A stretch of 64,000 nucleotides of DNA from Squalus acanthias (lineage: Eukaryota). The stretch lies in NCBI GenBank assembly GCA_030390025.1, contig CM059430.1, positions 62,310,001-62,374,000 on the forward strand, read 5' to 3'. Shown here piece by piece: positions 26,029 through 52,419 of the stretch. A program made the translations under genes and the position numbers. Within the stretch, counting starts at the first letter, position 1; each line of letters begins with the position of its first letter. The notes under the pieces are model-generated. The model had not been told where the DNA came from and ran no database searches. It worked only from the letters and a program-made list of their open reading frames with translations.

Positions 26029-26034
26029 TTTATT
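26029..26034 (-). terminator. Candidate polyadenylation signal of gene A
   Basis: AATAAA on the minus strand ~340 nt after the stop. Similar tttatt motifs occur at the homologous position near 47185. Confidence 0.5.
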
Positions 26035-26370: not shown

Positions 26371-26538
26371 TTACTCTTCCTTCTGTGTAGACAACTCTGT
26401 TACACCTCTTTGTTTTTTGGTCTGCAGCTGGGCATACTCTGTGCTTCTTTCATTATTTTTGCATTTCCCCGTTTTCTCTGAGCCAGTCAATGCTATAGTC
26501 GCGTACGTCAGCTTGTCACGGGCTGCCCCTTGTTTGGT
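26371..26538 (-). CDS. Gene A exon 7, ITIM plus ITSM and stop
   Basis: TKQGAARDKLTYATIALTGSEKTGKCKNNERSTEYAQLQTKKQRGVTELSTQKEE*; acceptor ctttacag. Confidence 0.85.
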   Translation of the reverse strand, partial: TKQGAARDKLTYATIALTGSEKTGKCKNNERSTEYAQLQTKKQRGVTELSTQKEE

Positions 26539-26745
26539 CTGTAAAGCCAATGTTTGGGAAGTTGTTAATTGGCCGTTTTGTAAATTCTGTGGCCTGCTGC
26601 TGAAAGCAATCATCAGAAGGACATACAAATAGCCTTAGATACAACACACGGTCAAAGTCAGCACAAACATATGCCCCCCGCTAACGCATGAATGTTGATA
26701 TTACACTGGTGACCCATGTTTCTCTGATCTGTTACTCAGTCCTAC

Positions 26746-26847
26746 CTGAGCGTATACGGTTCCCTCCTCTTCACGTTTACGTCTTGGAGTTTTCCTGGCT
26801 CTGCTCAAATCTAATGCAGCATAATGCACGGTCTCAGCCGCTGCTCC
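26746..26847 (-). CDS. Gene A exon 6, ITIM plus ITSM-like motif
   Basis: GAAAETVHYAALDLSRARKTPRRKREEEGTVYAQ; 102 nt, catgcag|...cag|gtagga. Confidence 0.85.
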
Positions 26848-28163
26848 CTGCATGGATCAGAAAGACGTGGATCAGAAAGAAAGTGTTTGGTTATGTGGCA
26901 AGTACATTGCCTTCACCATTTTCCGTACCCTGATCAAAGACGGAACATAATGACCTGGGCTTGAGATCAAGTGCACAAACCATAGTTCATATATATTTAC
27001 ATAAGTCCGAATATTAAGATACTGTGGTCACTATAACTAATATTTAAACCTGTGTTACAGAAATGTTTAATTGAGCGGCAGGTTTAGAACATCATTTTCA
27101 CCATTCCTAAGAACTAAATATTCCAGGACACTTGACTTTTTGAAGAGATATGCAAACTGGAAAAGGAGTAGTGGTAGCCCTGATTATAAAGGATGGGATA
27201 AAGACAGCTGAGTGAAAATATCATAGTTCGGAAAATCAAGATTTAGAAACACTTTAGCGGAGCTAAGAAACAACAATGGGCAGAAAACCTGGTAGGAGTA
27301 GTGTATAGGCCACTTAACAGTAGTTGTAGTGTCGGGCACAGTATAAATCAGGAAAATCTAAGTACATGTAACAAGGATAATATTGTAAACATGGCGGCCT
27401 TTAATTTTCATATAGACTTACCAAAAACAAATTTGCAGTAATACTGCGGAGAACGAGTTCATAGAATGCATTCAAGAGAGTTTTCTAGATCAGTATGTCG
27501 ATGAACCAACTAGTGAACAGGCTATTTTGGATCTAGTATTGAGCAATGAGACAGGGCTAATTCATAACCTGGTAGTAGTTGAGCCTCTGGGGAAGAGTGA
27601 TCATAATATGATAGAATTTGACATTAAGCTTTAGAGTGATTTAGTTAAGTCCGAAACTGGGGTCTTAATTCTAAACAATGCAGACTATGGAGGTATGAGG
27701 TGCAAGTTGGCTGAGGTAGATTGGGAAAATAGATTAAAAGATATGATAGTGTGTAAGCAATGGCAAACATTTAAACAATTAATTTGTAATTCGCGACAAA
27801 TATACATTGACTTAAGGAATTAAAACCCCATGTGAAAATTGGCCCAAAAGTGGCTAACAAGAGAAGTTAAAGATAGTATTAGATTAAAGGAAGAAGCTTA
27901 TAAAGTCGTCAACAAGTTGTAAACCTGAGGATTGGGAGGATTTTTTAGCAAAGAGTGAACAAGCAATTGATGAAGAGAAAGAAAATAAAATTTGAGAGTA
28001 AACTAGCAAAAGACATAAACACAGATTGTAAAACCTTCTATAGGTATGTAAGAAGGAAGAGATTACCGAAAATAAATGTGGGTCCCTTACAGGCAGAGAC
28101 AGGAGAAATTATAATGGGGAATCAGGAAATGGAAATATAGCAGAGACATTAAACAAATACTAT

Positions 28164-32573: not shown

Positions 32574-32617
32574 CAGCTCTTGACGGCGGTTCGGTCCCAT
32601 TACACATTCTTCTTTAC
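32574..32617 (-). CDS. Gene A exon 5, short cytoplasmic exon
   Basis: 44 nt (GKEECVMGPNRRQEL), tttccag|...ctg|gtaggt. Supplies the required phase 1 to 0 switch. Homolog at 48422-48463. Confidence 0.75.
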
Positions 32618-33292: not shown

Positions 33293-33406
33293 CTTCATAA
33301 TTCTGCAGTCGGCACCGCGTCCCAATGAAGATTATTAGCACTAGAAACGCCAATCCACCCACCGCACACCCAGCAGCCCAGAAGTAAAGTGACTTACCGA
33401 CGCTAC
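33293..33406 (-). CDS. Gene A exon 4, uncharged transmembrane segment
   Basis: GSVGKSLYFWAAGCAVGGLAFLVLIIFIGTRCRLQNYE; 114 nt; ttgcag|...gaag|gtaaga. Confidence 0.88.
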
Positions 33407-35118
33407 CTGCAAGATTAATAGGAACATTAAGTTATTGCGGGCCTTGGTTAAAAATAGACCTCAAGATAGTTTATTGCTTAAACTACGGTGTTCTTTTCAG
33501 GAACTCCGCGGTACAGAACGGCAATAAGAAAGATTAAATACAAAATGTTATTTTTTATAGATATACTTTTTGAAGTAACTTCTTCATCGAATGCATCATA
33601 TATTCTGGATCAATCTGCGTATCGCACTACCGGTTTAGGGATCTCACAACACTGTTTTAGGAGAGTTAAAGTATGAGAGAGATCAATTTCCCATGACCAA
33701 AGGACTTGTTCTTGACCTTTCTTATTTATTTACATAAAGTTTGAAGAAATTGGAGGCATTTTGTCAAAAGCATTTCTTCGTTGTCCGCTCGAAATTCCGG
33801 ATTGCAGCAGTCTGTTAAAAAACCCTTTTCAATTATCTGAACTGTGATTATTACAGTACGAATGTCACTGAATCGTAAACGATATCAATGGGCGATGGTT
33901 CATTGATTATTGTCTTGGGGAGAGAAAGAGTTTTTCACAATATAATATATTGACCCAGTCGTACTGTCGCCATGTTGCGGGCACACTTTGAATGAGATTT
34001 ATGAGACAGTTTACAAGTAAACCCGCTGTGACATGGATAGGTGAGGGGTAAAAGCAAGACAGGGATTAATTTCATATCTCTACAGTAGAATTAGCCGATA
34101 GGGGGATGGGGATCAGGAACTGCATGGGAAGAAGCCCGAGTGCAAACAGAATGACGGCAGCTCCTGGCAACATTCTTGGTGCAAGGACAGCAGGCTATAG
34201 TAAAGAATAAAATGTTATTAAAATTGAAACAAAAGACATTGAACAGGTATTAATAATAAGCAGGTGCGGAAATATAATCGGGCTGCAATTATAAACTCAA
34301 AACGAATTGTTATACATCAATTAAAGGAATTTCAAAGAAAATAATGTTTGACAGAATATTTGTGTGGCTGTGGCCAGGAGTTACCAATGGAATAGATCTC
34401 GACCATGAAAGTTAAAGGGGGATGTAAGCTTGAACAGAATGGGAGAAGATAAGACCTAGGATTAACCATGTCGTCGTGTGTGAGAGTACTGGGATTTGGG
34501 AAGTGATTTGAATTTTAGTGTGTGCCTTCTTGGTTGCTCGTCTTAGCCAGCACCGGGGGTAGAAGGCCATTGCGTAACTGAAATATGAGACCTAGGAAAA
34601 CAACAAATGAGCTGGTGTTTGGGAGTAATTGACGGTGTAAAAGTTCTCACAGTGAATTGCCCATCAGAGGCCGGTTTCAGGAGCCGCACTGGGAGACCCT
34701 CGAGACCAGACAAACGAACTGCCGCTCCTGGTCCTGCAACTCATGTAAGGAACCAAATAATGGGGAAAATGAATTCAGTTTAACAAGGGGACACGTTTGA
34801 TTGTTTAGTAATAAACAGGAGATGTAAAATAATTGGATGGAAGAGATAAACCGCCCACTCATATTTGTTTTAACAATTGGAAGCTGATATGGTTTAACAG
34901 GCAGCTACTGGGTGAAGGGCGATAATAATCCTTAGGTTTGACAAAGGTTCCGGGTCTATAATATTTTACATTCAAACATTAATTTTCTCTTTAGTTTGCT
35001 GTTTCCTGGACGCTTTTTCAAACAAAATTTATGATTATCAATATGAACAAATTCTATGATATACCCTTTCAGAATATAACAGTAGCTGACCTCACTTCTT
35101 GGCCTGTTGACTTCGTAC

Positions 35119-35430
35119 CTGGGTCGGAATTAACAACTGTGTGGATGACAATGGCAGGACTCCGGAGGGAGGCATGAGATACCAAACAGATGTAAACAGC
35201 CCCGTTCGGCAAAGGCTGCGTCTCTTCCAAAGAGCTGGAAACTTCATAGAGTCCCTCAGCGTTCTGCCGTTCAGTGGAATTGATCCCAGTTGCGGTTTCG
35301 ACGCCATTTTTATACCAAACGAGGGTTAATTCGCGCGGGTAAAACCCAGCCGTTTCACACACAAGAGTCAGAGACGCAGCTGAATTGCTCTTGGGTGTCC
35401 TGGGAACAATCTTCAATGGATTTGGGGCAG
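35119..35430 (-). CDS. Gene A exon 3, C1-set Ig domain
   Basis: LTLVCETAGFYPRELTLVWYKNG...GLYEVSSSL...VYICLVSHASL (canonical C1 motifs); 312 nt, phase 1-1. Confidence 0.92.
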
Positions 35431-35864
35431 CTACGAAACAAGAAATGGGGAATATCAGGTTTCTAGTGGGATATTAAACATAAGATATGGGAGCACAACG
35501 GTATCCTCAGTCACTCCCTGAGAGAGGGAGCCGCGCATTAATCGAAAAGACTTTCAGTCAGTCATCAATATATTTGGAATTTGTTCCGCAAATTCCATTT
35601 CCAGAAGTCTGATGTAAGAAATACATTTTGAGATGAGTCGAGTAACATTTTACTTAATCTGGTTAATATTGATGACATTTTACACAACTTAGCAAATGGT
35701 ACGTCATATTATGCCAAATAATTAGCAATTCTCTGCAGAGTTTTCGTGTAAATGTATTAATATAATTGGTTTACAATTTCAAAGACGGTGCAAAAAAAAT
35801 GACAAAACTTCATCCTTGTTACATTTGATACATTTGGATGTTCCCGCTCACTCCGGTCACTTAC

Positions 35865-36185
35865 CGCACACAGTTAGATGTGATCCTGTTCCATTTCCAA
35901 TAATTCTTCCCTGACGCATCACTGCGCAGTGATACGTTCCAGAGTCCCGGAAAGTCAGGTTCAGTAACTCAAAAAAACCGGGTCCTTTATCTTTCAGAGT
36001 AAATCGTTTTCATTTATCGGCTCCGCTTTGCAGAAATTCTTTCTCATCATGTTTCCACCAACACACTTCTATCCCTGAATTGTCATCAGACAGGTGGAAT
36101 AAGCACTGGAAGGTGATGGCTGTCCCCATTAATTTAGTTACTTCTCTGGGAGTTTGAGACACGCTGATCGAAGTACGCGCAGCAG
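35865..36185 (-). CDS. Gene A exon 2, V-set Ig domain with fused J-like G strand (in-frame stop)
   Basis: ISVSQTP...ITFQC...EVCWWK...ADK*KRF...LLNLTFRDSGTYHCAV...IIGNGTGSHLTVC; 321 nt; acceptor ttttctaacag, donor g|gtaagt. Confidence 0.9.
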
Positions 36186-36381: not shown

Positions 36382-36442
36382 CTGTGTAAATGATCCCTGG
36401 GAGAGACAGGAACAGGAAAAGAAGCATCACACTCGACAACAT
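36382..36442 (-). CDS. Gene A exon 1, signal peptide
   Basis: ATG start; MLSSVMLLFLFLSLPGIIYT; 61 nt, phase-1 donor ag|gtacct. Confidence 0.85.
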
Positions 36443-37801: not shown

Positions 37802-39379
37802 GTGAACTTATTATGAGCTACAACAAGGTAGAAAGCCTTTGTGATGAGGGTTACGCCATTCTGTGGAATATTTCCGTACTTCCTGTTGCTGAACATGATT
37901 TACGCTCCATATAAAATAACGCGGACCCGAAATTAAGTTACATTTTCCTTCCGATTTTGCGCAGCCTCTTGGGAGATTTTCTTCTATTTTAAAGGCGCTA
38001 GAAAAATACAGATTGGTCTTGTTGTTGGATCCTGTGGTGGGTTCTGGTTTCAAATGGAAACATTCGCTGCTCTCCAAACTTGACCACAAACATCAGATAA
38101 AACTAAGGGTGAGTGATTGTATGAATTAATCAGAAAATTATACTACGCACACAATCTTACATAGTAAGTGCGGCGTCCGTGGACACGTGCAATATGAGAA
38201 CCCATTAGGATACCCCTCAAATCACGGTAGAGCCTACCATGCACTCGACTGAGAAGTATATTACCCTTCACTTTTCTTAACATATTTTTGCCCATTGAGC
38301 TGTTGACCTGGAAGCTCATTCGACGAACGGATTTTGTTTATATTGCTAAAATTTCCGATCTGTGGCTTCCTGCGGGCGGAAAGCTCCGATCAGCAAAAAA
38401 TCTACGAACCTACCTGTTGGTCCTGGAGATACGGTGGTTTCCGATCCTGGGCCTCTCCTCTTTAAAAGGCGCAGAGGCCCAGGCATCCCAGGGGCGCATG
38501 CGGTTTGCAAGCGCCCCTGGTATCACGTGGGCCAGCTCAACCAATGGAAGAAGGGAATCCCCCTTCATACTTTTGACAGTTCCAAACGGACGGAACTGTC
38601 AAAAGTATGAATGGGGATGATTTCAAAAATGCACCAACACACTGAAATAAATAAAGAAAAACCATTACATATATAAAATTAATTAAAATAGCCTTCAATG
38701 TTAAACAAAAATGTACTTATTTGAAATGTTTTTAATATATTTTAGCGGGGCTTAATATAAACTTACCTTATCGGACAGTATTTTTAATTTATAATTGAGT
38801 GAAAAAATCGTGTTTTTCTATTTTTAAACTCTTATGCCTGTAAAAGCAGGCCTTCCGCCTGCTTTACCAGGCATAAGAATTCTATGGCCTTTCAGCGGGC
38901 GGAAGTTAAGCAAATAGCGCAACTCTCGTCCGCAGAGACACTTTTCTTGGGCAAGCGTGGGATCTATCAAGAGAATTCTTAACAGATCGCTAGTTCCGGG
39001 TTTCAGTGCATGCGCTTCGCATGCATAAACCCGAAACTTGCGCGGACCCTATGGGCGCGTACACACCTCGTACGCACCCGTGGGGGTCGGAAAATATTGG
39101 TAAATATTTCTTCTATCAAACCAATTTGCACAGTATAATCGTGGCTACCACCATTTTCCTTCAAACCTTTCAGGCAGGACGCGCTGATAACAGAACAATG
39201 CATTTGCAAAGAAGCCCTGAACTCAAACACACATCGGCAGTTCTCTGATGGAATCATCAAAGTTCTATTTGCTAAATATTCAATAAGGTTATTATAATGT
39301 GAAAATAAGTCCCTACGTTATTACTGACTTTTCAGATTCAGGTTACCGTGTTCGGAATAACATCAGGTTCCAGAGATAT
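37802..39379. other. Local inversion between two inverted MITEs
   Basis: The segment is the reverse complement of the homologous sequence at 11890-13070 and 52420-52630, while both flanks are in direct orientation. Confidence 0.85.
38344..39100. mobile_element. Harbinger-type MITE family 2, degenerate ends
   Basis: Homologous to 23361-24116. Confidence 0.7.
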
Positions 39380-40142
39380 GGCCCAGAAATTAAACATCGA
39401 TGGTTCCCGCGGGGGTAATGATTCCCCGCGATATCGCACTCCGCTCCTACCTTTTTGTTTGGGGCCCACACGAACTTTACTTTCAGATCCTCTCCCTGTT
39501 GCAACCGTGCAGTGCTTGCGTGTCCCAGAGGCGCAATTAGTTCGTGCGAGCTCTGGGATCACGTGATTCAGTTAGAGCCAATGGCAGCACACCATCTTTC
39601 ATTCATAGTTTTGACAGCAAGGGCTGTCAAAGCTATGAATACTACAAACCCCCAAAAGAACAGCTAAACCTCAATTAAATTTAAAAAAGCCATCACATTA
39701 ATAAAATAAGTATAATTAAATAAATTAACCACTTTAAACAAAAAATAAAATGTTTGAAAAAATGTAAAATCTTTTTCAAAGTTATAAAAATAAACTTACC
39801 TTTCTTTAAAGTCTCTAAAAAAGATAAACCTGTTGAAAAAATGTTAAAATAACACTTAATTAACTACTTACCTTGTTAAAAGGGGGTCCTACGCCTGCTT
39901 TCTTTATGTGTAAAATCTTCACCACTTACCGGCGCGTTCAAACCTGGAAAAAAAAACGAAATGCACTGCATGCGCACAACCTGTAGCGCACACACGGTTC
40001 ACTTAGGAACCGCCCCCTTTGCAATTCACGAAGTTCCGGTTTCCCGCACATGCGCAGTGCATACAAGAAACCGGCATTTCGGGACCTAATACGCGAGAGT
40101 ACACAGTGCGTACTCTCGCATATTAGGTTTAATTTCCGGGCC
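39380..40142. mobile_element. Harbinger-type MITE family 1 (inverted relative to the 37041 copy)
   Basis: ggcccagaaatt...aatttccgggcc. Confidence 0.85.
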
Positions 40143-41579
40143 ATTATGTAAGTCTTCATCAGCCATTTTATTGAAAGTTAAGGTACATTTTATAAAATAC
40201 AGTCTATCTCGCATGGAGCTGAACAAGGAGATTCAAACTGGAGTGTAGTCATCAGATGACGCAGGGTTAGAAGCTGGGTGATATTTGGACCAGAGCATGC
40301 AGACGTACCTCTACACCCATTTAAAGTCATATACATTCTGACCTATAAATTCCGATATTCATTTCTACAAAATTTAATGTTAAACAGTTAGCCTGCAATT
40401 ACACTATCTGGCAGTGGCGGCGCTGCAGTGCCACTAAGGCGGGGAGGGTGTAACTACAGCTTGACGTACTTAGAGTAACATTTTCCATTGTAAATGGTAC
40501 AGTGGACAGAAAATGTGCGCAGATATAATAATATATGTTATTGACTGACTTCTGCCTTGATTGAACTGCCGCCTTTAAGATTATCTGAGTGTAGATGCAT
40601 TTAAGGGGCGGCAAAATAAGCATATCAGGGAGAAGGGAATAGAGGGTTATGCTGATAGAGTTAGAGGAAGAAGGATGCGAGGAGGATCGAGTGGTGTATA
40701 AGCGACGGCATGCACTGGTTGGGCCGAATTCCCTGTTTGTGTGCTGTTTATTCTATGTAATTCTATGGAAGGAATCACCTGCCTGTTTAGGTAGGAGTAA
40801 AATAACCCAAGGTATTTTTGAAGAAGAACGCGCAGTTCTCCCTGTTTCCTCTTCACCAATCCTTCCCATAGATCTTTTTCACTCCTATCCTGTGGTTTCT
40901 CTCAGTGAGAGTGATAACTGGTTCCAAACTGAACCATTTTGTTCTGTGGTCCATGCCCAACAGGAACAGGCATAACTTTTGTTGGAAGTTTTCTGTTAGA
41001 ATCAAAGTAACGTCTGCCATTAAATTTCAATATCAAAGAGTTGCACGCTGCCATTGAACGAAATTGCAAGGACGTTAGTGAGAGTTCATGAAGCAATCGT
41101 TTTAATTGATTCCCGAAAATTTCTATTTGAACTAACAAATTAATACATCAATAAAATGTCGCTTTTCTTACCCACTGACTGGGATATAAATCAATTACTT
41201 TTTTCAATCACATAATACAGTTATATAAATCATTAAATATGTGCATTTAATATCTGTAGTTACATAAACCACAAGATCTGGCTTGCACTGAGTGGGGCTG
41301 TGATCACTGAACTCAGAAACGAGGAGCTCTAATGCATGCGCGCTATTCTCTACACAGACTATTCAAAGCAGTCACAGTGCTGCATGTTGGGAGCTGTCGG
41401 CTCCTGCCTTTTTGAGCTTGTTTACCTCTGACAGAGTGCTATCGCTGGAAAGCCCTTACACTGTAAACTCTGGATTGTGAGAGAGGTGCTAGCTTCATAT
41501 TAAAACGTAATCAGAATCTGATGAAAACACAGAAAATTCTATTGTATCAATTGGTTAAATATTTTCTTGTAAATTTTGT

Positions 41580-42540
41580 AATTTTCCAATCCTCCTTTGA
41601 TACGAGGCTGGTTCCAGAGGAGTGGAGAATTGCACAAATTACACCCTTGTTCAAAAACGGGTGTAAGGATAAACCCAGAAACTACAGGCCAGTCAGTTTA
41701 ACCTCGGCAGTGGGTAAGCTTTTAGAAACGATAATCAACGACAAAATTAACAGTCACTTGGACAAGTGTGGATTAATTAAGGAAATCCAGCACGGATTTG
41801 TTACTGGTAAATCGTGTTTAATTAATTTGATTGAGTTATTTGATGAGGTAACAGAAAGGGTTGATGAGGGCAATGCGGTTGATGTGGTGTATATGGACTT
41901 CAAAAAGGCGTTTGATAAATTGCCACATAATAGGCTTGCCAGAAAAGTTGAAGCCCATGGAATAAAAGGGATAGTGGCAGCATGGATACGAAATTAGTTA
42001 ATTACAGTTAACAGAGAGTAGTGGTGAACGGTTGGTTTCCGGTTGGAGGAAGCTATACAGTGATGTTCCCCAAGGGTTGCTACTGCTTTTCTTGATATAT
42101 ATTAATGACTTGGACTTGAGTGTACAATGCACAATTTCAAAATATGCGGATGAGACAAAACTTGTAAGTATAGTGAACAGTGAGGAGGATAGTGGTAGAC
42201 TTCAAGAGGACATAGACAGGCTGGTGGAATGGGCGGACATGTGGCAGATGAAATGTAACGCATAAAAGTAGGAAGTGATGCATTTTGGTATGTTAAACGA
42301 GGAAAGTCAATGATCTGGAATGCACTGCTGGAAGGGTGGCGGGTGTAGATTCAATTATGGCTTTCAAAAGGGAATTGGATAAGTAAATGAAGTAAAAATA
42401 ATTGCAGGGCTAAAGCAAAAGGGCTGGCGAAGTGGGATTAGCTGAAGTGCTGTTGCGGAGACCCGGCACGGGCTCGACGGGCCGAACGGCCTCCTTCTGT
42501 GCTATAACCATTCTATGCTTCTATTCTATGATTCTATGTA
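41580..42540 (+). mobile_element. CR1 RT fragment and tail
   Basis: NYRPVSLTSAVGKLLE...QHGF...YMDFKKAFDK...YADETK. Confidence 0.88.
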
Positions 42541-43057
42541 TTATGATGTTATAAAACTTGCTTCCGCTTGTAAGCCTCAGCTTAATGGTGAACGAAAAAC
42601 ACAGTATTATCAAACAATTTGGTTGGTTCCTCCTTATCTAATGGTTATACTTTACTGACTGGTCATGCGTTATTGTTTTAATACGATATTAGCAATTCAA
42701 CATTGGTGCTGTTTCTACCCTCCTTCTGCTCATTTGATTTTGGCGTTCACATATCAATTATCATTTGATGCTTTTTAATGATGTTAACTTAATTTAAACA
42801 CAACAGATGTAAGTGATATTAAACGACACAATCTTCGAGATAGATTGTTGGCATTCTCCGACCAGAATGGTTTGTATATACATTCCCAGATTCCTTTAGG
42901 TCGACAGGCTTAGATTTCTGGAATTGACTAACTCTTTCGTGCTTCGGTCCGTGATGGTCCTCTTGGTCCAAATATTGAGAATGTGGATGAACGGGTGTTG
43001 TCACATGAGGAAAGAAGGTCAAAGGGCCATGGTGCAACTCACCATGAAAAGAATAAT

Positions 43058-43490
43058 AGAATCATTGAAATTTATGGCACAGAAGGAGGCTATTCGGCCC
43101 ATCGTGTCTGCGCCCGTCGAAAAAGAGCCATCCAGACGATCCCCTCCTCCCAGCTCTTGATCTATAGCCTTGCAGGTTATGGCACTTCAACGCATATCCA
43201 AGAACTTTTTAATTGTGATGAGGGTTTCTGCCTCTACAACCCTTTCAGGCAGTGTTTTCCAGATCCCCAACGCCCTCTTAGAGAAAAAAGATCTCCTCAA
43301 CTCCCCTCTAATCTTCTACCAATTACGTTAACCTATGCCCCTTGGTTATTGCCTTCTCTGCTAAGTGATATACGTGCTTCCTATCTACTCTATCTAGGCC
43401 CCTTATAACTTTATACACCTCAATTAATTCTTCCCTCAGCGTAATCTTTTCCAAAGAAAACAACCCCAGCCTATCCAATCTTTTTTTTTA
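43058..43490 (-). mobile_element. CR1 3' fragment
   Basis: Same family as 22070-22500. Confidence 0.75.
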
Positions 43491-44918
43491 ACTCGTTCAT
43501 GGGCCGTGGGTATTGCAGGCAAGGCCAGCATTTATTGCCCATTCCTAGTTGCCCTTGAGAAGTTGGTCGTGAGCTGCCTTCTTGAAACGCGTCAGTCTGT
43601 GTGGTGAAGGTACTGCCACAGTGCTGTTAGGTAGGGAGTTCCAGGTCTTTGACCCAGGATGAAGAAAGAAAGCCTATTTACTTCAAAGTCAGGATGATGT
43701 ATGACTTGAAAGGGAACTTGGAGGTGGTGGTGTTCCGATGCATCTGCTGCCCTTATCCTTCTAGGTGGTAGAGGTCGCAGGTTTCGGATGGGCTGCCGAA
43801 GAAACCTTGACGAGTTGCTGCAGTGCATCTTGTAGATGGTACACACTGGGTAAGCCAATGTTGGAGCGAGTGAATGTTTAAGGTGCCAATAAAGCGGGCT
43901 GCTATGTCCTGGATAGTGTCGAACTTCTTGAGTGTTGTTGGAACTGAACTCATCCAGGCAAGTGGAGCGTATTCCATCACCCTCCTGACTTGTGCCTTGT
44001 AGATGGTGGACAGGCCTTGGGGAGTCAGGAAGCGAGAGACTCGCCACAGAATACCCAGCCTCTGATCTGCTCTTGTTGCCACAGAATTTTTGTGGTTGGT
44101 CCAGTTAAGTTTGTGGTCAATGCTGACCCCCCAGGATGTTGATGGTGGGGGATTCGGCGATGGTAATTCCATTTAATGTCAAGGGGCGGTGGTTAGGCTC
44201 TCGCTTGTTGGAAATAGTGATTGCCTGGCACTTGAATGACGCGAATATTACCTGCCACTTATCAGCCCAAGCCTGAATGCCGTCCAGGTCTTGTTGCATG
44301 CGGGCATGGACTGCTTCATTATCTGAGGAGTTGCGGATGACACTCAATACTGTGCTGTCCTCAGCGAACATCCCAACGCCTGACCTTATGATGTACGGAT
44401 GGTCATTGATAAAGCAGCTGAATATGGTTGGCCCTAGGACATTGCCCTGAGAAACTCCTGCAGCGATGTCCTGGGGCTGTGATGATTGACCTCCAACATC
44501 CACAACCATCTTCCTTTGTGCTAGGTATGACTCCAGCCGGTGGAGAGTTTTCTCCCCAATTCCCTTCGACTTCAGTTTTACTAGGGCTCCTTGATGTCAC
44601 ACTCGGTCAAATGCTGCCTTGATATCAAGGGCAGTCACTCTCACCTCACCTCTGGAATTCAGCTCTTTTGTCCATGTTTGACTGTAATGAGGTCTGGAGC
44701 CGAGTGGTCCAGGCCGAACCCAAATTAGGCACCAGTGAGCAGGTTATTGGAGAGTAAGTGCTGCTTCATAGCAGTGTCGACGACACCTTCCATCACTTTC
44801 CTAATGATTGAGAGTAGACTGATGGTGCAGTAATTGGCTGGTTTGGATTTATCCTGCTTGATGTGGACAGGACATACCTGGGCAGTTTTCCATATTGTCG
44901 GAAAGTTGCCAGTGTTAT
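43490..44918 (-). mobile_element. Second-family LINE, RT and 3' end
   Basis: NYCTISLLSII; GVSQGNVLGPTIFSCFIND; FAEDS; YKAQVRRVMEY. Confidence 0.85.
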
Positions 44919-45199
44919 ACGACTCCGTTGATACCTTACTTCTTATCAGAACCCGGTACTGATAGAACGCCCAAATGTTCATCGTTTTTAATGCTGTACG
45001 TGAATGTGTCACTTTCGTTTCCATAATTATCAAAATAATCTACTGCACGTTGACTTAATCTCCAGCTCGAAGCCAACGAATTTTTATTAGTTGAACAAAT
45101 AGAATGTGACATAGATTGCAACATAACGGCAAAGAAACATTTGCACAAGTACTTACATCTCGCAGGCCCTGTGTCATTCCGGATAAATCTACTAAACTC

Positions 45200-46270
45200 T
45201 TGCAGAAACCTGAGCAAATCAAGCCCAGTCAGCACAAATTTCAAAAAGGCAGATCGCGCTTGACTTATAGGATTTACTGAAGAAATAACAGAGAAGAGAA
45301 AAAGGAAAGGTAATAGATGAAGTTTAAATACATTTTAAAAACGCATTTGATAACGTTCCACATATTATAACGCCACGTGGAAGTAAGAGTAAGGTGGCCA
45401 CATGGTTGGAGAGATAGTTGGAAGATAGGAAACAAAGTTTAAGGGTAAAATAACGTTTCTCGCGTTAAGATGTGGCGAGTGGTGTTCCACGGGCACTGCG
45501 TTGGGCTTCTTCTATATATTATACACATCAATTATCTTGACTGGGGAATTGAGGGTGCATCATTAAAACGTGCAGATGACATTTTATGGGGAGTCGGGAA
45601 AGAAATTATGCTGCAGGTCGTGAACTGCAGCAGACGACATCGAAAGTTAGTTTGAAGGGCAGATAGATGTCTGATTTTGAATGCAGGGAAATGTGAAATA
45701 GTATATTTTTGCAGGTACATTTAGAAAAAGGAAATGCATCTTGAACGGTATGATTTTAAATGCTGCAGAGGAGCACAGGGACCTCAATGAATGATTGAAA
45801 CAGAAGTTCATTACGAAGTAAAAATACAAAGGGAGTGTCTTGGCTTAGATTTTGGTGCCATCGAATACAGAAACAAGGAGATAATGTTCAACTGGTGTAA
45901 GAGCTTATGTAGAACTATGGAAGAATACAAAAATAAATTAAACGGCGCTGCCTAACTGACCAAGAATGAAGAATTATTAATTGAGAAACGTGGACTTCTT
46001 TAACTGGAGCTCAAAAATTGCTGAGTGACTTGATAGAGGTTTTCAAAACTACAAGGTTTTATGACAAGAACATAGTGATAGGTTATTTTCACTGTCCAGT
46101 AGACGGTGGCGAGTGAGTACAACTTTAACATAATCGGAAAAAATAAAGGGAGAGGTAAAATACTCTTTGCTTGTTTAGACTTTGAGATGTGGACGTGTCT
46201 GCCACAAAACGTTACTAAATCACAGCCCAAGATTTATTTTAGAATTGAATTAGTTGCATGAAAAAGAGGA
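45200..46270 (+). mobile_element. Ancient, highly decayed CR1 remnant (also at 61670-62740 and 25470-25800)
   Basis: Residual motifs agtcagcac..ttt.aaaaaggcagatcg (SQHGF.KG.SC), gagtggtgttccacggg (SGVP), gcagatgac. Confidence 0.55.
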
Positions 46271-47399
46271 ATATTAACGATTGTGTGAATTTAAATGGAA
46301 AACGGAACTAACTGAGTGGAGAGAAAAAAAGTACAGGCTTTGTTTCTCTGTTGTAAAACGCTTGTTAATGCACAGTCATCAATCCCGGGCAGCGAGGCAG
46401 AACAAGAGGAATGGATTCAATTCGTCTTGTATTATCTTTACATTCGGAGCTGACCCCTTGGTAACTGGAACTGTTCAGCTGCCTTTCTTCCAGTAACTAG
46501 CCACACAATGTTCTAACCCAGTAATTCAAGTGATCTACTTCCTCAATACTCACAGCATAATCATGGAAACTACGAGTTGTTTATAGCTGACGAGGCAACC
46601 ACGCTAATATGGATAAATGGTTGCAGTTCTATTCTCTCTCTTGAGGCTTGTTAATTTTCTAGTTGCGTGCCAAACCATACAGACTGCTTATATCTATATT
46701 ATCCACGACTGTCAACATTTTAAATGCCTGTTTAGTGCGGTCTTTTGTCCAATAAAAATGCATTACGCTCTGTCGGGCTTTTCTCACAACTTAAGTAGTA
46801 TGACCCGGATTCATTATTGTTGTTCGTCTCAGAACTCTCTGGAATCACTATCCATTTGAAGATACAACCGAATGAGAATAATGGAGGTATTCGATTTTGG
46901 AAGCGACTTGGAGTTGTCAGGGCGCATAGATTCGAATAGGAATCATACGGAATTTAGAGAAAGGCATCTTATACGCCTTCATCTGCAAGCTGTTTTCAGA
47001 GGGATTATGGAAGAATCCATAAATTTGAGCGCCCTGCCTTCCAAACCAGGAAAATCGCCTGCACAGGAGGTCAGAACACGGTAACGCAACACACAAGTCA
47101 AAACTCAGGCTTTGCAGTTTTACCCGCAAAAAATAAATAAATCAGCAATCGTTGATTGATAAGAGAGGTCGTGTAACATCTACTTTTATTGAATTTTATT
47201 TGATGATATCAAGATACAGCAGAACAAATAGCGTATCATTGCAGATATTTGTCATCTGTGAAATACTATAGATTGATCAAAAATGTGCAACGCAAGAGCG
47301 CTTTCTTACAAATAATTAAATGAAAATTCCTCAAATATTTAAGCAATAAAAAACGATTACACCCGCATTCAATGATATAACACTCGAATATGTTGCACT

Positions 47400-47763
47400 G
47401 ATTATTTTATTGTTGTAGACTGACAAATCTAGAGTCGCCTAGCTCCCTTGTTTTGTCTGTAATCCCATGTTTGGAAATATTGTAAATTGGTCGTTTTTCC
47501 AATTTTGTGGACTGCTGACGAAAACAATCACCAGAATAACACACAGACAGCTTGAGGTACACTACACGACCCGAGTCACCCAACCTTGTAGTCTCAGTTA
47601 TCGCATGAATGTTGGTGCTGCACTGGTGATCTGTGTCTTTCTGATCCGCTACCCAGCCCCGGCTGATGGAACACAGTCCTCTCCTCTTCAAGCTAACATC
47701 TTGTAGTTAACTTAGTTCTGCTCAAACCTACTGCAGCATATCAACAATCTAAGCCTTTTCTAC
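47400..47763 (-). pseudogene. Decayed ITIM pseudo-exons downstream of gene B
   Basis: 47763-47663 is homologous to exon 6 with both splice sites lost and stops. Sequence from 47456 is homologous to exon 7 with deletions. Confidence 0.75.
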
Positions 47764-48144
47764 CCGCATGGGCCAGAAATAATTATATATGTTCCAATGT
47801 GGCGAGTTCATTGCCTTCACCAGTTTACAGACTACTGGTTAAGCATTGAATAGAACAACATAGGCTCGAAACAAATTGCAGGAGGCACAGTTAATGCAGT
47901 GATACAAGTGTGAATGTTAAGACCGGTGAGTACTGTGGTCGTTATAACTAATAATTAAACCTGTCAATATTCGTTTTACAATACAATGTTACGGAAATGA
48001 TTAAGTGAGCAGTAGTTCCAGAACACGGTGTTGCCCAATTACAAATAATTTTGAATCGAAAATAGTTATTAATTAGGTAAATTTTCAACGAAACGGGCCG
48101 ATTTCTTGTCTGCTAGTTAATCACTTAAACCAGCAATGCACCGG

Positions 48145-48252: not shown

Positions 48253-48951
48253 GAGGGTGAAATCCTTCCCGGCCGCCGTCAAGAATTTTTGTGAATACGA
48301 TTAGAATGACCCATTAAGGGGGTCAAATAAATTTAGGAAATAGACAAACAGTTCTGACGTGATTAAGATATACATTTTTCTTCATATTTGAACCTTTTGC
48401 TGGGTGAATAAATAAAAGTAGCAGCTCCTCATGCCGGTTCGGTCCCTTTATAGAATTTTTTCCCTGTGAAGTAATGAAATTTAATCATAATGATTGATTG
48501 ATATATTTACTGAGTTTGCATATTAATGCTTTCAAAGACCTTTCTAGAGTCGCTATAATGCCGAACTTCATTTTCAATTTCAGATTATGCTGTTAGTGTT
48601 TGAAATCTCACTGCTGAGACCAGGAATGTTGTTCAACCATTCTGGGCCGGAGTCTCACACCTATTCAGGATACATTCTATTCATCATCCTGCGAAGTGGA
48701 AATTTCTGTTGCAAATATCCAGATAATCAGATCCTTTAATTTAAATTCTGCGAGTATTTCTGCGTTTTAAAGAACTGAATCTGTTGCTGTTTGGAACAAT
48801 CAGCGCTCCCTGAAATCAGATAACACTGCCTTCAACTTTAAGTCATAATTTAGTTCTCCTTCCTCTGCGCTATTCGGAAACACTCACTCCCCCGTCCTCC
48901 TCAGGTCGCTGAAGTATTGTATGAAAATCAAATGCTTATAATAGATCTTAC

Positions 48952-49065
48952 CTTTATTAATCTGCAATTGACAGTGCATCCCAATGATGATCAGGAGCAG
49001 CAGGAACGCTAATCCATCCACCGCATATCTAAATCCCGAGTAGTAAGAGGACATACCGACGCTAG
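48952..49065 (-). CDS. Gene B TM exon with Arg and Asp
   Basis: ASVGMSSYYSGFRYAVDGLAFLLLLIIIGMHCQLQINK; 114 nt; splice sites intact. Confidence 0.85.
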
Positions 49066-51503
49066 CTGCAAGAATAATAGGAACAAAATATTAAGTTGTA
49101 CATTGTGACGAGTGTTTCCTAAAAAGAGATCTCAGCAGAGTTCTTTGGTTGAACTATTGATGTTTTATTAACTCCGTCGTACAGAATGGCAATAAGGATG
49201 TTTTAATAAAAACTGTTATTCTTTTTTAGATATAATATTGGGAGGGACTAATGCTTCTAATGGGTGAGAAAATTATTGCTTAAAATGCGAAGAGGGATTG
49301 GTGTAAGAGAGGTAATATACGAGTGGAATGTTTCCCTTTACCGAATGGCTTGTATTTTTCCTTCACTTTTCTTATGTTCTTTACCTACTGTCTGATGTTA
49401 TCCCAGGCAATTCGGTGGCAATTGTTTCGCCGTTCCCTTTAGAAAATGCCGAATTGCAGAAATCGGTTAAAACCCCCTGTTCACACATCTGTACTTTATT
49501 GAAGTAAGAATGTCACTGTATAGTCATGGGGATGGTTTATTAAATATTGTCTGCCGAGTTTAGCAGTTCTTAATAAAATGATGTAACCGGCTGAAAAGCA
49601 GTCAGACAGTAAGAACAGTTTAAATTAAATTTATGAGACAGATCCCACTTCAGCCCTTGTGCGAAGATTAGAAGTTGGCCAAAGGGTTAATTTCAGAACT
49701 CTTCATTCAGAATCGCCAAAAAGCGGATCAGGATCGGGAAATGAATTGGGAGAAACCCGAGAGCAGACAACTTGATCGTAGCTCCTGGTAAACGTCCAGA
49801 TGAAGCAGTCAACGTTAAAGAATAAACATTTTAACATGGAAACAAAACAAAGAGTAACAATCAGCAAAATATGAAATATCATCGGATAACAAAGATAAGC
49901 CTCATTTTTATATGTGTTCTTTATCAAATACAGGAATTTGAAGGCTTAATAATGTTTTACAGAGAATGTTTGTACGGCAGACGATATACCCGGTTTTACA
50001 ACACATTGGGTTCCACTAATCATTCAAACATGAATTTTATGTCTTTGTTTATATTCCCATGAGTTTTCCGTGTACTCCAGCAAACATTCAAAAAGGTTTC
50101 CTTCATTTCAATTGCTTATGAAAAGATTTCCAAATTCTTTCGATTCAGGTGCCCACGGCTCCGACTTACATCGTTCAGAAAGCCACATTCTTTCCTATGC
50201 TGCAGTACAACCACTTACTCGCCATGGGCAAAGCTATGGGAAATAAGCTTATATATGGATTTCCAACGGTGGTGTGCACAGTACGTTTGAGCATAGGCTA
50301 TTGTATAACACGAAGGTGACTCCGGGGGTTAGAATAACATCGGTCGCCTGTGGTGTTTTGCTTCTTGCAATTGTATATTTGCTTCTATCCAACTTGCGAA
50401 TTACTTTTGTGCTGCCCTCTCTATCTTTGCCTTACACCTTCTTCTTTCTTAATCTTTCTATTTGTATGTTTGTCACACATTTTATTCATTGTGCTGTCTG
50501 TAAAGGTCTATCTAAAGATCTATGCAGCAATTTTTTGGATTTTGTCTGTTTCACTCCTAATAAATGAATCGCTAATACTTCTCTCCTTAGGTAGTTCCAA
50601 ATGTTGTGTATTGGCTCCCACAAAAGATACATTTTAATATACTCAAAGTCTCTCTCTTATCATTGTTTACGGTCTTAATGACGTGGGAAGATGGAAGGCA
50701 ACATGTACTTTGTGAAGGAGGCTTTTGGAAAGGTGATGCAAGATGCAGAGTTGAGAGAGTAAGTGGGATGGGGAGACTGTGTGCCTGGAAGGGGTGTAGG
50801 CAGATCTGTGGCCAGGACGAAACAATAGAATAGATTTCGATTTGAAAGTTGGAGGGCAAGGTAGTCTTGAACCGAACGGGAGAAGGTACGAACTAGGATT
50901 AATCATGATGTCTTGTGTGGAAACATGATGGGATTATGGTATGTTTTCTTGGTTGCTCGGTTAATCCATTCACTTGGGGGTAGAAGGCCATTGCTGAAAA
51001 ATGAGAGATGGAACACAGGAAATGAGTTTGTGTTTGCGAGTAATTTACACTGTAAAAACCTCACAGTGAATCGCCCATCAGAGGTCGGACTCAGGAGACC
51101 CACTAGGAGACGCTCGAAGCCAGACAAACGAAGTGCCGCTCTTGGTCCTGCAACTCATGTAAGGAACCAGATAAAGGGAAACAAATGAGTTTTGAGTAAT
51201 CAGCAAGAAATGAAAACAATTGGATAAAAGAGGTTCATCGCCTGCTCATATTTGTTTAACAATTGGAAGCTGATAAGTTTTAACAGGCAGCTACTGGGTG
51301 AAGGGCGATAATAATCCTTAGGTTTAACAAAGTTTCCGGGTCTATAATATTTTACATTCAAACATTAATTTTCTCTTTAGTTTGCTGTTTCCTGGGCGCT
51401 TTTTTAAACTAAATTTATGATTATTAATATGAACAAATTCTATGATATACCCTTTCAGAATATAACAGTAGCTGACCTCACTTCTTGGCTGTTGGCTTCG
51501 TAC

Positions 51504-51815
51504 CTGGGTCAGAATTAACAACTGTGTGGATGACAATGGCGGGAGTCCGGAGGGAGGCATGAGATACCAAACAGATGTAAACAGCCCCGTTCGGCACTGT
51601 CTGCGTCTCTTCCAAAGAGCTGGAAACTTCATAGAGTCCCTCAGTGTTCTGCCGTTCAGTGGAATTGATCCCAGTTGCGGTTTCGACGCCATTTTTATAC
51701 CAAACCAGGGTTAATTCGCGCGGGTAAAACCCAGCCGTTTCACACACAAGAGTCAGAGACGCAGCTGAATTGCTCTTGGGTGTCCTGGGAACAATCTTCA
51801 ATGGATTTGGGTGAG
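51504..51815 (-). CDS. Gene B C1-set exon (open)
   Basis: 312 nt, splice sites intact, 5 aa differences from the gene A C1. Confidence 0.9.
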
Positions 51816-52249
51816 CTACGGAACAAGAAATGGGGAATATCAGGTTTCTAGTGGGATATTAAACATAAGATATGGGAGCACAACGGTATCCTCAGTCACT
51901 CCCGGAGAGAGGGAGCCGCGCATTCATCGAAAAGACTTTCAGTCAGTCATCAATATATTTGGAATTTGTTCCGCAAATTCCATTTCCAGAAGTCTGATGT
52001 AAGAAATACATTTTGAGATGAATCGAGTTGCATTTTACTTAATTTGGTTAATATTGATGACATTTTACACAACTTAGCAAATGGTACGTCATATTATGCC
52101 AAATAATTAGCAATTCTCTGCAGAGTTTTCGTGTAAATGTATTAATATAATTGGTTTACAATTTCAAAGACGGTGCAAAAAAAATGACAAAACTTCATCC
52201 TTGTTACATTTGATACATTTGGATGTTCCCGCTCACTCCGGTCACTTAC

Positions 52250-52419
52250 CTCACACAGTTAGATGTGATCCTGTTCCATTTCCAATAACTCTTCCGTGAC
52301 GCATCACTGCGCAGTGATACATTACAGAGTCCCGGAAAGACAGGTTCAGTAACTCAAAAAAACCGGGTCCTTTATCTTTCAGAGTAAATCGTTTTATTTT
52401 ATCGGCTCCGCTTTGCAGA
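52250..52419 (-). pseudogene. Gene B V-exon 3' remnant
   Basis: LQSGADKIKRFTLKDKGPGFFELLNLSFRDSVMYHCAVMRHGRVIGNGTGSHLTV* (TGC changed to TGA at 52253-52251). Confidence 0.88.

What the first reader, a model, noticed from the sequence alone, without database searches (positions are those of the whole stretch)
26371..52419. Tandem cluster of paired (inhibitory/activating) SIRP-like V(J)-C1 receptors in a cartilaginous fish
Seen: gene A has an uncharged TM and four tyrosine motifs. Gene B has nearly the same C1/V sequence, but a TM containing Arg (FRYAVDGLAFLLLLIIIG), a tail that stops after GKKFYKGTEPA, and destroyed ITIM exons. Established: ITIM tail versus charged TM plus short tail is the signature of paired receptors (SIRPalpha/beta, KIR, LILR). 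A J-containing V domain followed by C1 in a non-rearranging gene is typical of SIRPs and resembles antigen receptors. Inference: this is a shark paired-receptor family with a single C1 (mammalian SIRPalpha has two). The ORF track hides it because the exons are spread among TEs.
Basis: partly seen in the sequence, partly recalled or inferred. Interest (0 to 1): 0.9.

Follow-up and report, generated by a model that had tools for sequence, protein, structure and literature searches.

The report
Shark paired V-C1 immune receptor genes
Two neighbouring shark genes belong to a large cartilaginous-fish family of antibody-like surface receptors, seemingly undescribed in print, that come in "brake" and "accelerator" versions; the accelerator copy in this stretch is broken.

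Summary
On the minus strand lie gene A (7 exons, 36442 to 26371) and gene B (52419 to about 47410). The fossil 3' end of a third copy starts at 63876.

- **Gene A:** V(J)-C1 ectodomain, uncharged TM, and a tail with two ITIMs plus one ITSM-like motif. Its V exon carries an in-frame TGA in this assembly. Contigs from 2 of 2 other DNA samples read AGA (Arg), the family consensus, so A is probably functional.
- **Gene B:** it has the Arg-bearing TM, a frameshifted short tail and decayed ITIM exons, as reported. It also lacks the leader and the 5' half of V and has a TGA at the V end, so this copy is a pseudogene.
- **Other species:** intact Arg-TM, short-tail relatives exist in catshark, smooth-hound, horn shark, a stingray and a skate.
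- **Family range:** every named database hit is chondrichthyan (20 species). NCBI labels vary: SIRP-alpha-like, SIRP-beta-1-like, tapasin-related-like and Ig-lambda-like.

"Paired receptor family" is supported at family level. "SIRP-like" is only partly supported, because the family is as close to Ig light chains, and the V domain is closest to amphioxus VJ-C2 and TCR/NAR V. I found no paper on it. Scan notes report similar genes elsewhere in this genome.

The parts
36382..36442 (-). Gene A leader exon (ATG at 36442-36440; 20 codons + 1 base, phase-1 donor G|GT at 36382/36381-80): the 'split leader'
   Evidence: Read. It aligns to the N-terminus of Heterodontus P0008. Contig record 31 of run X6 joins 36384 to 36186, skipping 197 nt. 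That is within 2 nt of the predicted splice.
35865..36185 (-). Gene A V(J) exon, 321 nt, one exon holding both V and the J-like G strand (NGTGSHLTV); in-frame TGA at 36012-36010 in this assembly
   Evidence: V-set 18.4 and 24.7 bits for the two pieces. 59-70% aa identity to P0008. At 36012 the DNA contigs of X1 (43.3 of 43.3 depth) and X2 (64.8 of 64.8) read the other base, giving AGA = Arg. This is the nearly invariant R80 of alignment A2.
35119..35430 (-). Gene A C1-set exon, 312 nt, phase 1 on both sides
   Evidence: Pfam C1-set 2.1e-13, 50.8 bits against a cut-off of 21. PDB hits are Ig CL/CH1, SIRP-alpha d2 and UrIg2. 72% identity to Heterodontus francisci XP_067904999.
33293..33406 (-). 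Gene A transmembrane exon, 114 nt, uncharged TM with the family G-C-A-x-G-G motif
   Evidence: 72% identity over 43 aa to Heptranchias perlo P0173.
32574..32617 (-). Gene A cytoplasmic exon 1 (44 nt, phase 1 to 0)
   Evidence: It matches P0169 residues 265-278.
26746..26847 (-). Gene A cytoplasmic exon 2 (34 codons): ITIM VHYAAL and the TVYAQ tyrosine
   Evidence: 79% identity over 34 aa to P0168.
26371..26538 (-). Gene A last exon: ITIM LTYATI, ITSM-like TEYAQL, stop TAA 26373-26371
   Evidence: 90% identity over 49 aa to Heptranchias P0173.
52250..52419 (-). Gene B remnant of the V(J) exon (3' half only); TGA at 52253-52251 where A has TGC, directly before the donor
   Evidence: Homology to A starts at 52419. 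The 5' half of V is found once in the window, in A only.
52417..53410 (.). Repeat copy abutting B's cut V exon. It is inverted relative to the copy at 37040-38019 upstream of A. Further copies lie at 7851-8601, 24636-25383 and 39376-40149.
   Evidence: Self-BLAST.
51504..51815 (-). Gene B C1-set exon, 312 nt
   Evidence: Pfam C1-set 1.8e-14. Sister of A's C1 with SH-aLRT 99. dS 0.053, dN 0.026 against A.
48952..49065 (-). Gene B transmembrane exon, 114 nt, with Arg at about position 7 of 23 and a B-specific Asp four residues on
   Evidence: 85% identity over 27 aa to Scyliorhinus canicula P0051, but only 20 of 37 aa and 80 of 111 nt shared with A.
48429..48463 (-). Gene B first tail exon, 2 nt shorter than A's. 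The frameshift gives 11 residues and then TGA (48431-48429). The donor GT is also lost.
47410..47775 (-). Gene B fossil ITIM exons: acceptor AG and donor GT lost, in-frame stops, second Tyr now Phe, last-exon ITIM deleted
   Evidence: tblastn at 55% and 51% to A's tail exons.
63876..64000 (-). Fossil tail exon of a third, B-like copy (gene C) that runs off the window
   Evidence: 44919-47534 ~ 61385-64000 at 98%.
34368..36034 (.). Block shared with 50806-52419 at 90% nt (V 3' half, V-C1 intron, C1 exon and 750 nt of the C1-TM intron). Beyond it, similarity drops to 74% or nothing: a conversion or crossover boundary.
39376..47534 (.). First copy of a 13.3-kb tandem unit, repeated at 52640-64000 (97-98%, with a 3.2-kb insertion at 58195-61385). 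It is full of LINE fragments.
   Evidence: RVT_1 hits at 41521-41997 and 57389-57865.

Best explanation
The window holds part of a tandem array of a cartilaginous-fish multigene family. Its members are germline-joined (non-rearranging) V(J)-C1 type I membrane receptors that exist in inhibitory and activating forms.

Gene A is an inhibitory member. The inferred mechanism is that ligand binding by the V domain leads to phosphorylation of the tail tyrosines (two ITIMs and one ITSM-like motif). Those then recruit SH2 phosphatases (SHP-1/SHP-2) and damp the cell. Its stop codon in this assembly is either a private null allele or an assembly error, because other individuals read Arg.

Gene B is a dead copy of the activating counterpart. 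It keeps an A-like C1 and V remnant, recently homogenised with A. It also keeps an old, separately conserved TM with an Arg about one third of the way into the membrane. By analogy, that Arg would dock an Asp-bearing ITAM adaptor (FcR-gamma/CD3-zeta type more likely than DAP12). Its tail was shortened by a frameshift, leaving fossil ITIM exons. B then lost its leader and the 5' half of V at a repeat junction and was copied again in a 13.3-kb tandem duplication.

Shown here: gene structures, lesions, mosaic divergence, family range, and conservation of the Arg position.

Inferred only: phosphatase and adaptor binding, ligand and cell type.
For: - **Structure:** seven exons with canonical splice sites and IgSF phases; C1-set 2e-13.
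- **A intact elsewhere:** 2 of 2 DNA samples covering 36012 read AGA, not TGA, in contigs otherwise identical over 194 nt.
- **Splicing:** a leader-to-V contig in run X6.
- **Family:** 22 of 22, 55 of 55 and 86 of 87 hits (1 unnamed) are chondrichthyan proteins.
- **Pairing:** 63 of 117 proteins have an uncharged TM plus ITIM/ITSM, and 17 of 117 have Arg in the TM, no motif and a short tail.
- **Fixed Arg site:** the Arg replaces the Gly of the inhibitory G-C-A-x-G-G motif. Examples are P0172 and P0051 (S. canicula), P0192 (Mustelus), P0046 (Heterodontus) and P0069 (Hypanus).
- **Old TM lineage:** B's TM is 85% identical to catshark P0051, while their C1 domains are 56% identical.
- **Mosaic:** A against B shows 10 of 309 nt different in C1 and 31 of 111 in TM.
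- **Tree:** Arg-type and ITIM-type C1s are sisters in four places (SH-aLRT 99, 96, 85, 82).
Against: - No binding, expression or ligand data exist.
- The RNA evidence is one low-depth contig (2.6) from a run whose RNA label is a guess. It has 4 mismatches in 131 nt and runs on unlike the window after 36096, so it may come from a paralogue.
- Two other contigs from such runs cross the C1 acceptor unspliced.
- A carries Asp at a Gly that is conserved in at least 90% of 50 family members (G68 of alignment A2).
- A's second tyrosine is not a canonical ITSM after splicing.
- Contigs drop rare variants, so the TGA could still be a real allele.
- B's extra Asp next to the Arg and its missing V show that no activating partner is encoded within this window.
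- Many database proteins are uncurated gene models. Some short tails may be model truncations.
Confidence: 0.7

Rival explanations
1. These are true orthologues of tetrapod SIRP-alpha/SIRP-beta (a CD47-binding myeloid checkpoint pair) that simply have one C1 domain fewer.
For: - NCBI machine names are 'tyrosine-protein phosphatase non-receptor type substrate 1-like' and 'signal-regulatory protein beta-1-like'.
- The nearest ESM Atlas clusters by features are SIRP-alpha clusters (0.97, 215 of 256 features).
- SIRP-alpha d1-d2 aligns in one stretch at 63.7 bits.
- From recall, the SIRP-alpha tail also has four tyrosines in two ITIM-like pairs.
Against: - Ig lambda and kappa V-C score the same (65.5 and 63.3 bits).
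- The family V alone finds no SIRP among the best 60 PDB sequences.
- C1 identity is 26-36% to a SIRP-like protein (P0085) and 27-34% to Ig light-chain C.
- There is a single C1 exon instead of two.
- The basic TM residue is Arg, not the Lys of SIRP-beta (recalled).
- The deep C1 tree is unresolved.
- Synteny was not testable.
Confidence: 0.12
2. Both genes in the window are pseudogenes in a decaying, TE-ridden array, and nothing functional is encoded here.
For: - There is a TGA in A's V exon in the assembly.
- B is truncated, has a second TGA and decayed tail exons.
- The array is full of LINE fragments.
- No run on record as RNA holds the stretch.
Against: - A has all seven exons with intact splice sites and no other lesion.
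- 2 of 2 other DNA samples read Arg at the stop.
- A's tail is 90% identical over 49 aa to a Heptranchias protein, which argues for constraint.
- A spliced leader-V contig exists.
Confidence: 0.13
3. The family members are chains of a germline-encoded, TCR/BCR-like dimeric receptor. The TM charges serve assembly with CD3-like partners rather than forming an inhibitory/activating pair.
For: - The V domain is closest to amphioxus VJ-C2, TCR V-alpha/beta and NAR V.
- The architecture is V(J)-C1-TM, as in one TCR chain.
- A third TM type, with Arg near the outer end and Asp-His at the inner end, is conserved from chimaera to sharks.
- Cys is frequent at the V-C1 junction and in the TM.
- Scan notes place relatives beside Ig light-chain clusters (unchecked).
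Against: - Most members (63 of 117) carry ITIM/ITSM tails, which antigen-receptor chains lack.
- A conserved N-x-T sequon sits in the J-like bulge, where V-V dimers pack (inference).
- No evidence of pairing exists.
Confidence: 0.05

Closest known systems
SIRP family (SIRP-alpha / SIRP-beta / SIRP-gamma) of tetrapods
   Same: - A non-rearranging V domain with a J-like G strand, followed by C1-set.
- An inhibitory form with several tail tyrosines in ITIM-type motifs.
- A sibling form with a basic TM residue and a short tail.
- Tandem clustering.
- It is the name NCBI's pipeline gives most members and the nearest Atlas clusters.
   Different: - One C1 domain, not two.
- Arg, not Lys, in the TM.
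- Sequence no closer to SIRP than to Ig light chains.
- The V domain is not SIRP-like on its own.
- The ligand is unknown.
UrIg and UrIg2, non-rearranging shark antigen-receptor-like genes (PMC12227049, section 7 and searched passages read; PMC10751288, passages read)
   Same: - Elasmobranch genes with a single-exon VJ domain, a split leader and C1-type domains.
- UrIg2's solved structure (9dmx) is among the best PDB matches.
   Different: - Nurse shark UrIg2 has nine C domains and the epaulette shark model 11. UrIg also has multiple C domains. Both are read as antibody-like and liver/gill-expressed (PMC12227049).
- The family here has one C1, and either ITIM tails or a charged TM.
- UrIg2 scores lower against the family profile (44.2 bits for V part + C1).
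- That paper holds none of the words SIRP, ITIM or PRARP.
Teleost NITR and NILT, chicken CHIR, mammalian KIR/LILR: multigene paired Ig-like receptors
   Same: Large, fast-evolving tandem families. They mix ITIM-tailed members with members that have a charged TM and short tail. Ectodomains are homogenised between the two kinds.
   Different: Those use V/I or C2-type domains without a C1-set domain. This rests on abstracts seen in the listing for NITR, NILT and CHIR, and otherwise on recall. No sequence kinship was shown here.
PRARP (Fu et al. 2019, J Immunol) and NKp30
   Same: Non-rearranging VJ-type genes discussed as relics of the antigen-receptor precursor (passage in PMC10751288).
   Different: The PRARP paper is not held, so its architecture could not be checked. 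NKp30 is V-only as I recall, with no C1. Kinship was not tested.

Membership tests
SIRP family | N-terminal non-rearranging V-set domain with a J-like strand | tested here: met
   One 321-nt exon holds V and the G-x-G...L-x-V strand. V-set hits appear on both pieces. HMMER aligns the motif to the lambda J segment.
SIRP family | Two membrane-proximal C1-set domains (V-C1-C1) | tested here: not met
   There is one C1 exon per gene. Only two C1 exons exist in the whole window. Most relatives are V-C1.
SIRP family | Sequence closer to SIRPs than to other V-C1 proteins | tested here: not met
   SIRP-alpha d1-d2 scores 63.7 bits against lambda 65.5 and kappa-type 63.3. No SIRP appears among the 60 best V matches. 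The C1 tree is unresolved.
SIRP family | CD47 binding; SHP-1/2 recruitment (alpha); DAP12 association through a TM Lys (beta) | not testable with these tools
   Only motifs can be read: two ITIMs and one ITSM-like motif in A, and Arg (not Lys) in B's TM.
Paired inhibitory/activating Ig-like receptors (functional class) | Near-identical ectodomains on genes with opposite signalling ends, in one cluster | tested here: met
   A and B C1 are 95% identical in aa, against 54% for the TM exon. The two genes lie 16 kb apart. B itself is truncated.
Paired inhibitory/activating Ig-like receptors (functional class) | Intact activating members with a charged TM residue and a short motif-less tail | tested here: met
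   Not met in this window. Met in relatives: 17 of 117, for example P0172 and P0051 (S. canicula) and P0192 (M. asterias). These are gene models, not cDNAs.
Paired inhibitory/activating Ig-like receptors (functional class) | Opposite signalling shown (phosphatase against ITAM adaptor) | not testable with these tools
   Needs biochemistry.
UrIg / UrIg2 | VJ exon and split leader followed by a string of several C domains | tested here: not met
   The VJ exon and split leader are present, but there is a single C1 followed by a TM. UrIg2 has 9-11 C domains (PMC12227049, section 7).
Rearranging antigen receptors (IgL, TCR) | V and J as separate segments joined by RAG | tested here: not met
   V and the J-like strand are contiguous in one exon in A. 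The J end is contiguous in B's remnant too.
PRARP | Architecture and sequence as defined by Fu et al. 2019 | not tested
   The paper is not held. No PRARP sequence was available from any tool.

The most novel reading that the evidence does not exclude
This chondrichthyan V(J)-C1-TM family is an independent surviving lineage of the pre-RAG antigen-receptor precursor. It would be a membrane-bound, single-C1, non-rearranging chain about as close to Ig light chains and TCR chains as to SIRPs. It would already have been wired to ITIM and adaptor signalling, and it would have been kept beside Ig light-chain clusters. That would make it a better model than the multi-C UrIg genes for what the RAG transposon invaded.
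Probability: 0.12. Interest if true: 0.85.

Novelty: new variant of a known kind. Interest (0 to 1): 0.55.

Why it matters
Paired inhibitory/activating Ig-like receptors are well studied in mammals, birds and bony fish. I found no description of such a family in cartilaginous fish, the oldest living jawed vertebrates. Nine literature searches were answered and found none (and the in-paper search). The library lacks most J Immunol, Immunogenetics and Dev Comp Immunol papers.

This family joins an antigen-receptor-like VJ-C1 ectodomain to ITIM tails or an Arg-bearing TM. It is present in sharks, rays and chimaeras. That gives a testable entry point for three questions:
- How old the ITIM/adaptor pairing logic is.
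- What cells carry it in sharks.
- How non-rearranging VJ-C1 genes relate to Ig, TCR and SIRP.

For annotation, it shows that the mixed machine names hide one family. Those names include SIRP-like, tapasin-related-like, Ig lambda-like, CD276, NCR3LG1-like and MHC class II beta-like.

Tried and rejected
**Both genes dead.** I first read both genes as pseudogenes because of the TGA in A's V exon. I dropped that for A after the reads.

**More family exons.** I looked for further family exons or Ig light-chain exons in the window. None were found: 12 query proteins hit only the same exons. The stretch 1-24000 holds only LINE-type ORFs.

**Relatives outside Chondrichthyes.**
- All named hits of three word-indexed searches were chondrichthyan.
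- That tool only sees proteins sharing 5-residue words and of similar length, so this is no proof of absence.
- The exhaustive C1 search did find C1 domains at about 30% identity in poly-C1 proteins of frogs, a caecilian, the coelacanth and teleosts.

**Deep phylogeny.**
- The C1 tree with the outgroups I could obtain is unresolved at depth: 38 of 84 inner branches are open.
- Those outgroups were one SIRP-like protein recognised by eye only, salmon IgL-C-like repeats, an IgH-like protein and poly-C1 proteins.
- Named SIRP, TCR, tapasin, UrIg, PRARP and NKp30 sequences could not be brought in, because no tool supplied them and memory is barred.

**Weak or limited results.**
- The V 3' piece alone against the PDB gave only weak, uninformative hits.
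- Only the quick method was used for the trees. Before the tree I left out 16 stored proteins (isoform or cluster duplicates P0151-P0154 and P0157-P0166, and the multi-domain P0010 and P0144), plus hits whose C1 match was under 88 residues.
- The census rests on a simple hydrophobicity window and regular expressions. 9 of 117 proteins score as 'charged TM plus motif', mostly the Arg...Asp-His type, where the motif hit lies at the membrane edge.

**Not consulted.** Supplementary files of the papers were not consulted. Table S1 and figs S1-S2 of PMC12227049 may list neighbouring genes that bear on novelty.

Full report
**What is there**

All features lie on the minus strand. Stop-to-stop translation and direct reading give gene A as seven exons:
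- Leader 36442-36382.
- V(J) 36185-35865 (321 nt).
- C1 35430-35119 (312 nt).
- TM 33406-33293 (114 nt).
- Three cytoplasmic exons: 32617-32574, 26847-26746, and 26538-26371 including TAA.

Every intron has AG and GT ends, and the phases are 1,1,1,1,0,0, as usual for Ig-superfamily genes. The leader is split, and V and the J-like strand (N-G-T-G-S-H-L-T-V) share one exon.

Pfam calls the C1 exons C1-set (2.1e-13 for A, 1.8e-14 for B). The two pieces of A's V exon hit V-set at 18.4 and 24.7 bits. The TM and tail exons hit nothing, 4 of 9 queries.

A's TM is uncharged. After splicing, the tail reads ITIM (VHYAAL), a non-canonical TVYAQT, ITIM (LTYATI) and an ITSM-like TEYAQL.

**Gene B**

B has a C1 exon (51815-51504) and a TM exon (49065-48952) of exactly the same lengths as A's.
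- Its first tail exon is 2 nt shorter than A's. The phase-1 splice therefore runs into TGA after 11 residues, and the donor GT is gone.
- The next two exons are fossils: lost AG and GT, in-frame stops, Tyr to Phe, and the last ITIM deleted.

B's V exon, however, matches A only from 52419 downstream. Upstream of that is an inverted copy of a repeat also found upstream of A. The 5' half of V and a leader occur once in the window, in A. B also has TGA where A has TGC, one base before the V donor. B is a truncated pseudogene.

The stretch 39376-47534 is repeated at 52640-64000 at 97-98%. B therefore sits in a 13.3-kb tandem unit, and the fossil tail of a further copy begins at 63876.

No other Ig exon is in the window. 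The remainder is LINE debris.

**Is gene A alive?**

In the assembly, A's V exon has TGA at 36012-36010. The position corresponds to an Arg conserved in at least 90% of 50 aligned relatives.

I laid contigs of four public runs of the same (coded) organism on 32450-36600.
- Both DNA samples that cover the site read the other base, giving AGA = Arg. These were X1 (one contig, 43.3 of 43.3 depth) and X2 (two contigs, 64.8 of 64.8).
- The contigs are otherwise identical to the window over 194 nt. They cannot come from B, whose homology ends at 36034.
- The stop is therefore an assembly error or a private null allele. Contigs drop rare variants, so I cannot say which.

One contig of run X6 (RNA by guess; 213 nt, depth 2.6) joins 36384 to 36186, skipping 197 nt with one letter between. 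Given the repeated A-G at both edges, this is the predicted leader-to-V splice. That contig has 4 mismatches and departs from the window after 36096, so it may be a paralogue's transcript. Two further contigs of such runs cross the C1 acceptor unspliced. Expression of A itself is therefore not shown.

**The family**

An exhaustive HMMER search with A's C1 exon found 1,094 proteins at E up to 1e-3 and 20 at up to 1e-30. The single-domain hits at 40-72% identity are V-C1-TM proteins.

Three further searches returned 22 of 22, 55 of 55 and 86 of 87 named hits, all from Chondrichthyes, with one unnamed Logan protein. Twenty species are covered across sharks, rays, skates, a sawfish and the chimaera Callorhinchus.

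Their machine names vary:
- SIRP-alpha-like.
- SIRP-beta-1-like.
- Tapasin-related-like.
- Ig lambda-1-like.
- CD276 homologue.
- NCR3LG1-like.
- MHC class II beta-like.

The closest relatives are a Heterodontus francisci protein (72% in C1) and Heptranchias perlo proteins whose TM and tail nearly match A's: 72% over 43 aa and 90% over 49 aa.

**Pairing**

Among 117 stored family proteins with a recognisable TM:
- 63 have an uncharged TM core plus at least one ITIM/ITSM.
- 17 have an Arg in the outer half of the TM, no motif and a tail under 45 aa.
- 9 have a charged TM plus a motif hit.

In one Arg type the Arg replaces the Gly of the inhibitory G-C-A-x-G-G motif at a fixed site. Examples come from catshark, smooth-hound, horn shark and a stingray.

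B's TM belongs to a second Arg form, shared at 85% over 27 aa with catshark P0051. That protein is an apparently intact V-C1-TM model ending about six residues after the membrane. Yet B's and P0051's C1 domains are only 56% identical.

A third TM type, with Arg near the outer end and Asp-His at the inner end, runs from chimaera to sharks.

In the C1 tree (96 rows, quick method) A and B are sisters (SH-aLRT 99). Arg-type and ITIM-type proteins are nearest neighbours in four places, with support 99, 96, 85 and 82.

Divergence between A and B differs sharply by exon:

| Exon | nt different | dS |
|---|---|---|
| C1 | 10 of 309 | 0.053 |
| V 3' half | 7 of 156 | 0 |
| TM | 31 of 111 | 0.52 |

The high-identity block ends at 34368/50806, inside the C1-TM intron. 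This is the classic picture of an old split between signalling ends, with ectodomains kept alike by conversion or unequal crossover.

**What it is like**

| Query | PDB result |
|---|---|
| C1 exon alone | Ig CL/CH1 first (2.5e-16 to about 1e-12); SIRP-alpha d2 2.9e-12; UrIg2 4.3e-12; SIRP-gamma 6.6e-12 |
| Profile of 17 full-length relatives | Ig lambda V-C 65.5 bits; kappa-type V-C 63.3; SIRP-alpha d1-d2 63.7 (plus 44.2 for d3); UrIg2 44.2, 27.0 and 33.2 |
| Family V domain alone | Amphioxus IgVJ-C2 2.7e-6; then TCR V-alpha and V-beta, and shark NAR V; no SIRP among the 60 listed |

The ESM Atlas puts SIRP-alpha clusters nearest by learned features (0.97). That is a lead, not a test. A C1 tree with the few outgroups I could obtain is unresolved.

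The fair description is an antigen-receptor-like VJ-C1 ectodomain on a SIRP-style signalling chassis. SIRP membership fails on domain number and on specific kinship.

UrIg and UrIg2 share the single-exon VJ and split leader but have many C domains. The paper describing UrIg2 holds none of the words SIRP, ITIM or PRARP (PMC12227049, section 7 read). The PRARP paper could not be read.

**Literature**

Searches found no paper describing this family. One search (the NCBI name plus 'shark') found zero papers. The library misses most subscription immunology journals, and supplements were closed, so 'undescribed' is provisional.

**Scan notes**

Other first-stage notes on this genome report the same mosaic (s1-888633), the fossil ITIM exons at the window's end, and copies beyond it. 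They also report many VJ-C1-TM-ITIM genes beside Ig light-chain clusters on other pieces. I verified only the first two on this window.

**Limits**

Neighbourhoods in other species and fold comparison are therefore missing.
- Function (phosphatase recruitment, adaptor pairing, ligand, cell type) is inferred from motifs and from established knowledge of paired receptors, not shown.

**Verdict**

Gene A is a probably functional inhibitory member, and gene B is a dead, duplicated activating-type copy. Both belong to a chondrichthyan-wide paired V(J)-C1 receptor family that is already in public gene models but, as far as I could search, has not been described.

Noticed in passing
stored proteins P0061, P0174, P0081, P0117, P0013, P0015, P0237, P0253 (not in the window): A third TM type in the family has Arg near the outer end of the TM, Asp-His at the inner end and a short tail. 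It is conserved from Callorhinchus to several shark orders. It resembles neither the ITIM nor the Arg-Cys type and may dock different partners.
   Followed up: partly
window 32728-33005: A short element in gene A's TM-to-tail intron has enormous summed contig depth in all four runs. Depth reaches about 229,000-246,000 in the DNA runs and 23,000-38,000 in the runs guessed to be RNA. It is a very high-copy repeat, possibly transcribed.
   Followed up: no
window 7851-8601, 24636-25383, 37033-38019, 39376-40149, 52417-53410: Five copies of one 750-1000-bp repeat lie in both orientations at 80-90% identity. One copy abuts B's cut V exon and another marks the edge of the 13.3-kb tandem unit. This repeat probably mediated both rearrangements. 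Its longest ORF has no Pfam hit.
   Followed up: partly
window 35436: All four runs read the other base at this intron position, just upstream of A's C1 acceptor. As at 36012, the assembly differs from every run laid, which hints at assembly errors or a rare haplotype.
   Followed up: no
window 36067-36065 (gene A V exon): A has Asp where at least 90% of 50 relatives have Gly, in the W-W-K-x-G-E motif after the first Cys. This may matter for folding if A is expressed.
   Followed up: no
family alignments A1 and A2: The J-like strand carries a conserved N-G-T sequon, and many members have a Cys at the V-C1 junction and another in the TM. These features bear on whether the receptors dimerise.
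   Followed up: no
window 9316-9660 (-) and 16915-17310 (+): There are ORFs with a GDSL-esterase-like domain (Pfam 1.5e-06, below cut-off, for the first). From recall, such domains occur in ORF1 of some LINE families. The pair is inverted (9850-10133 ~ 16892-16609).
   Followed up: partly
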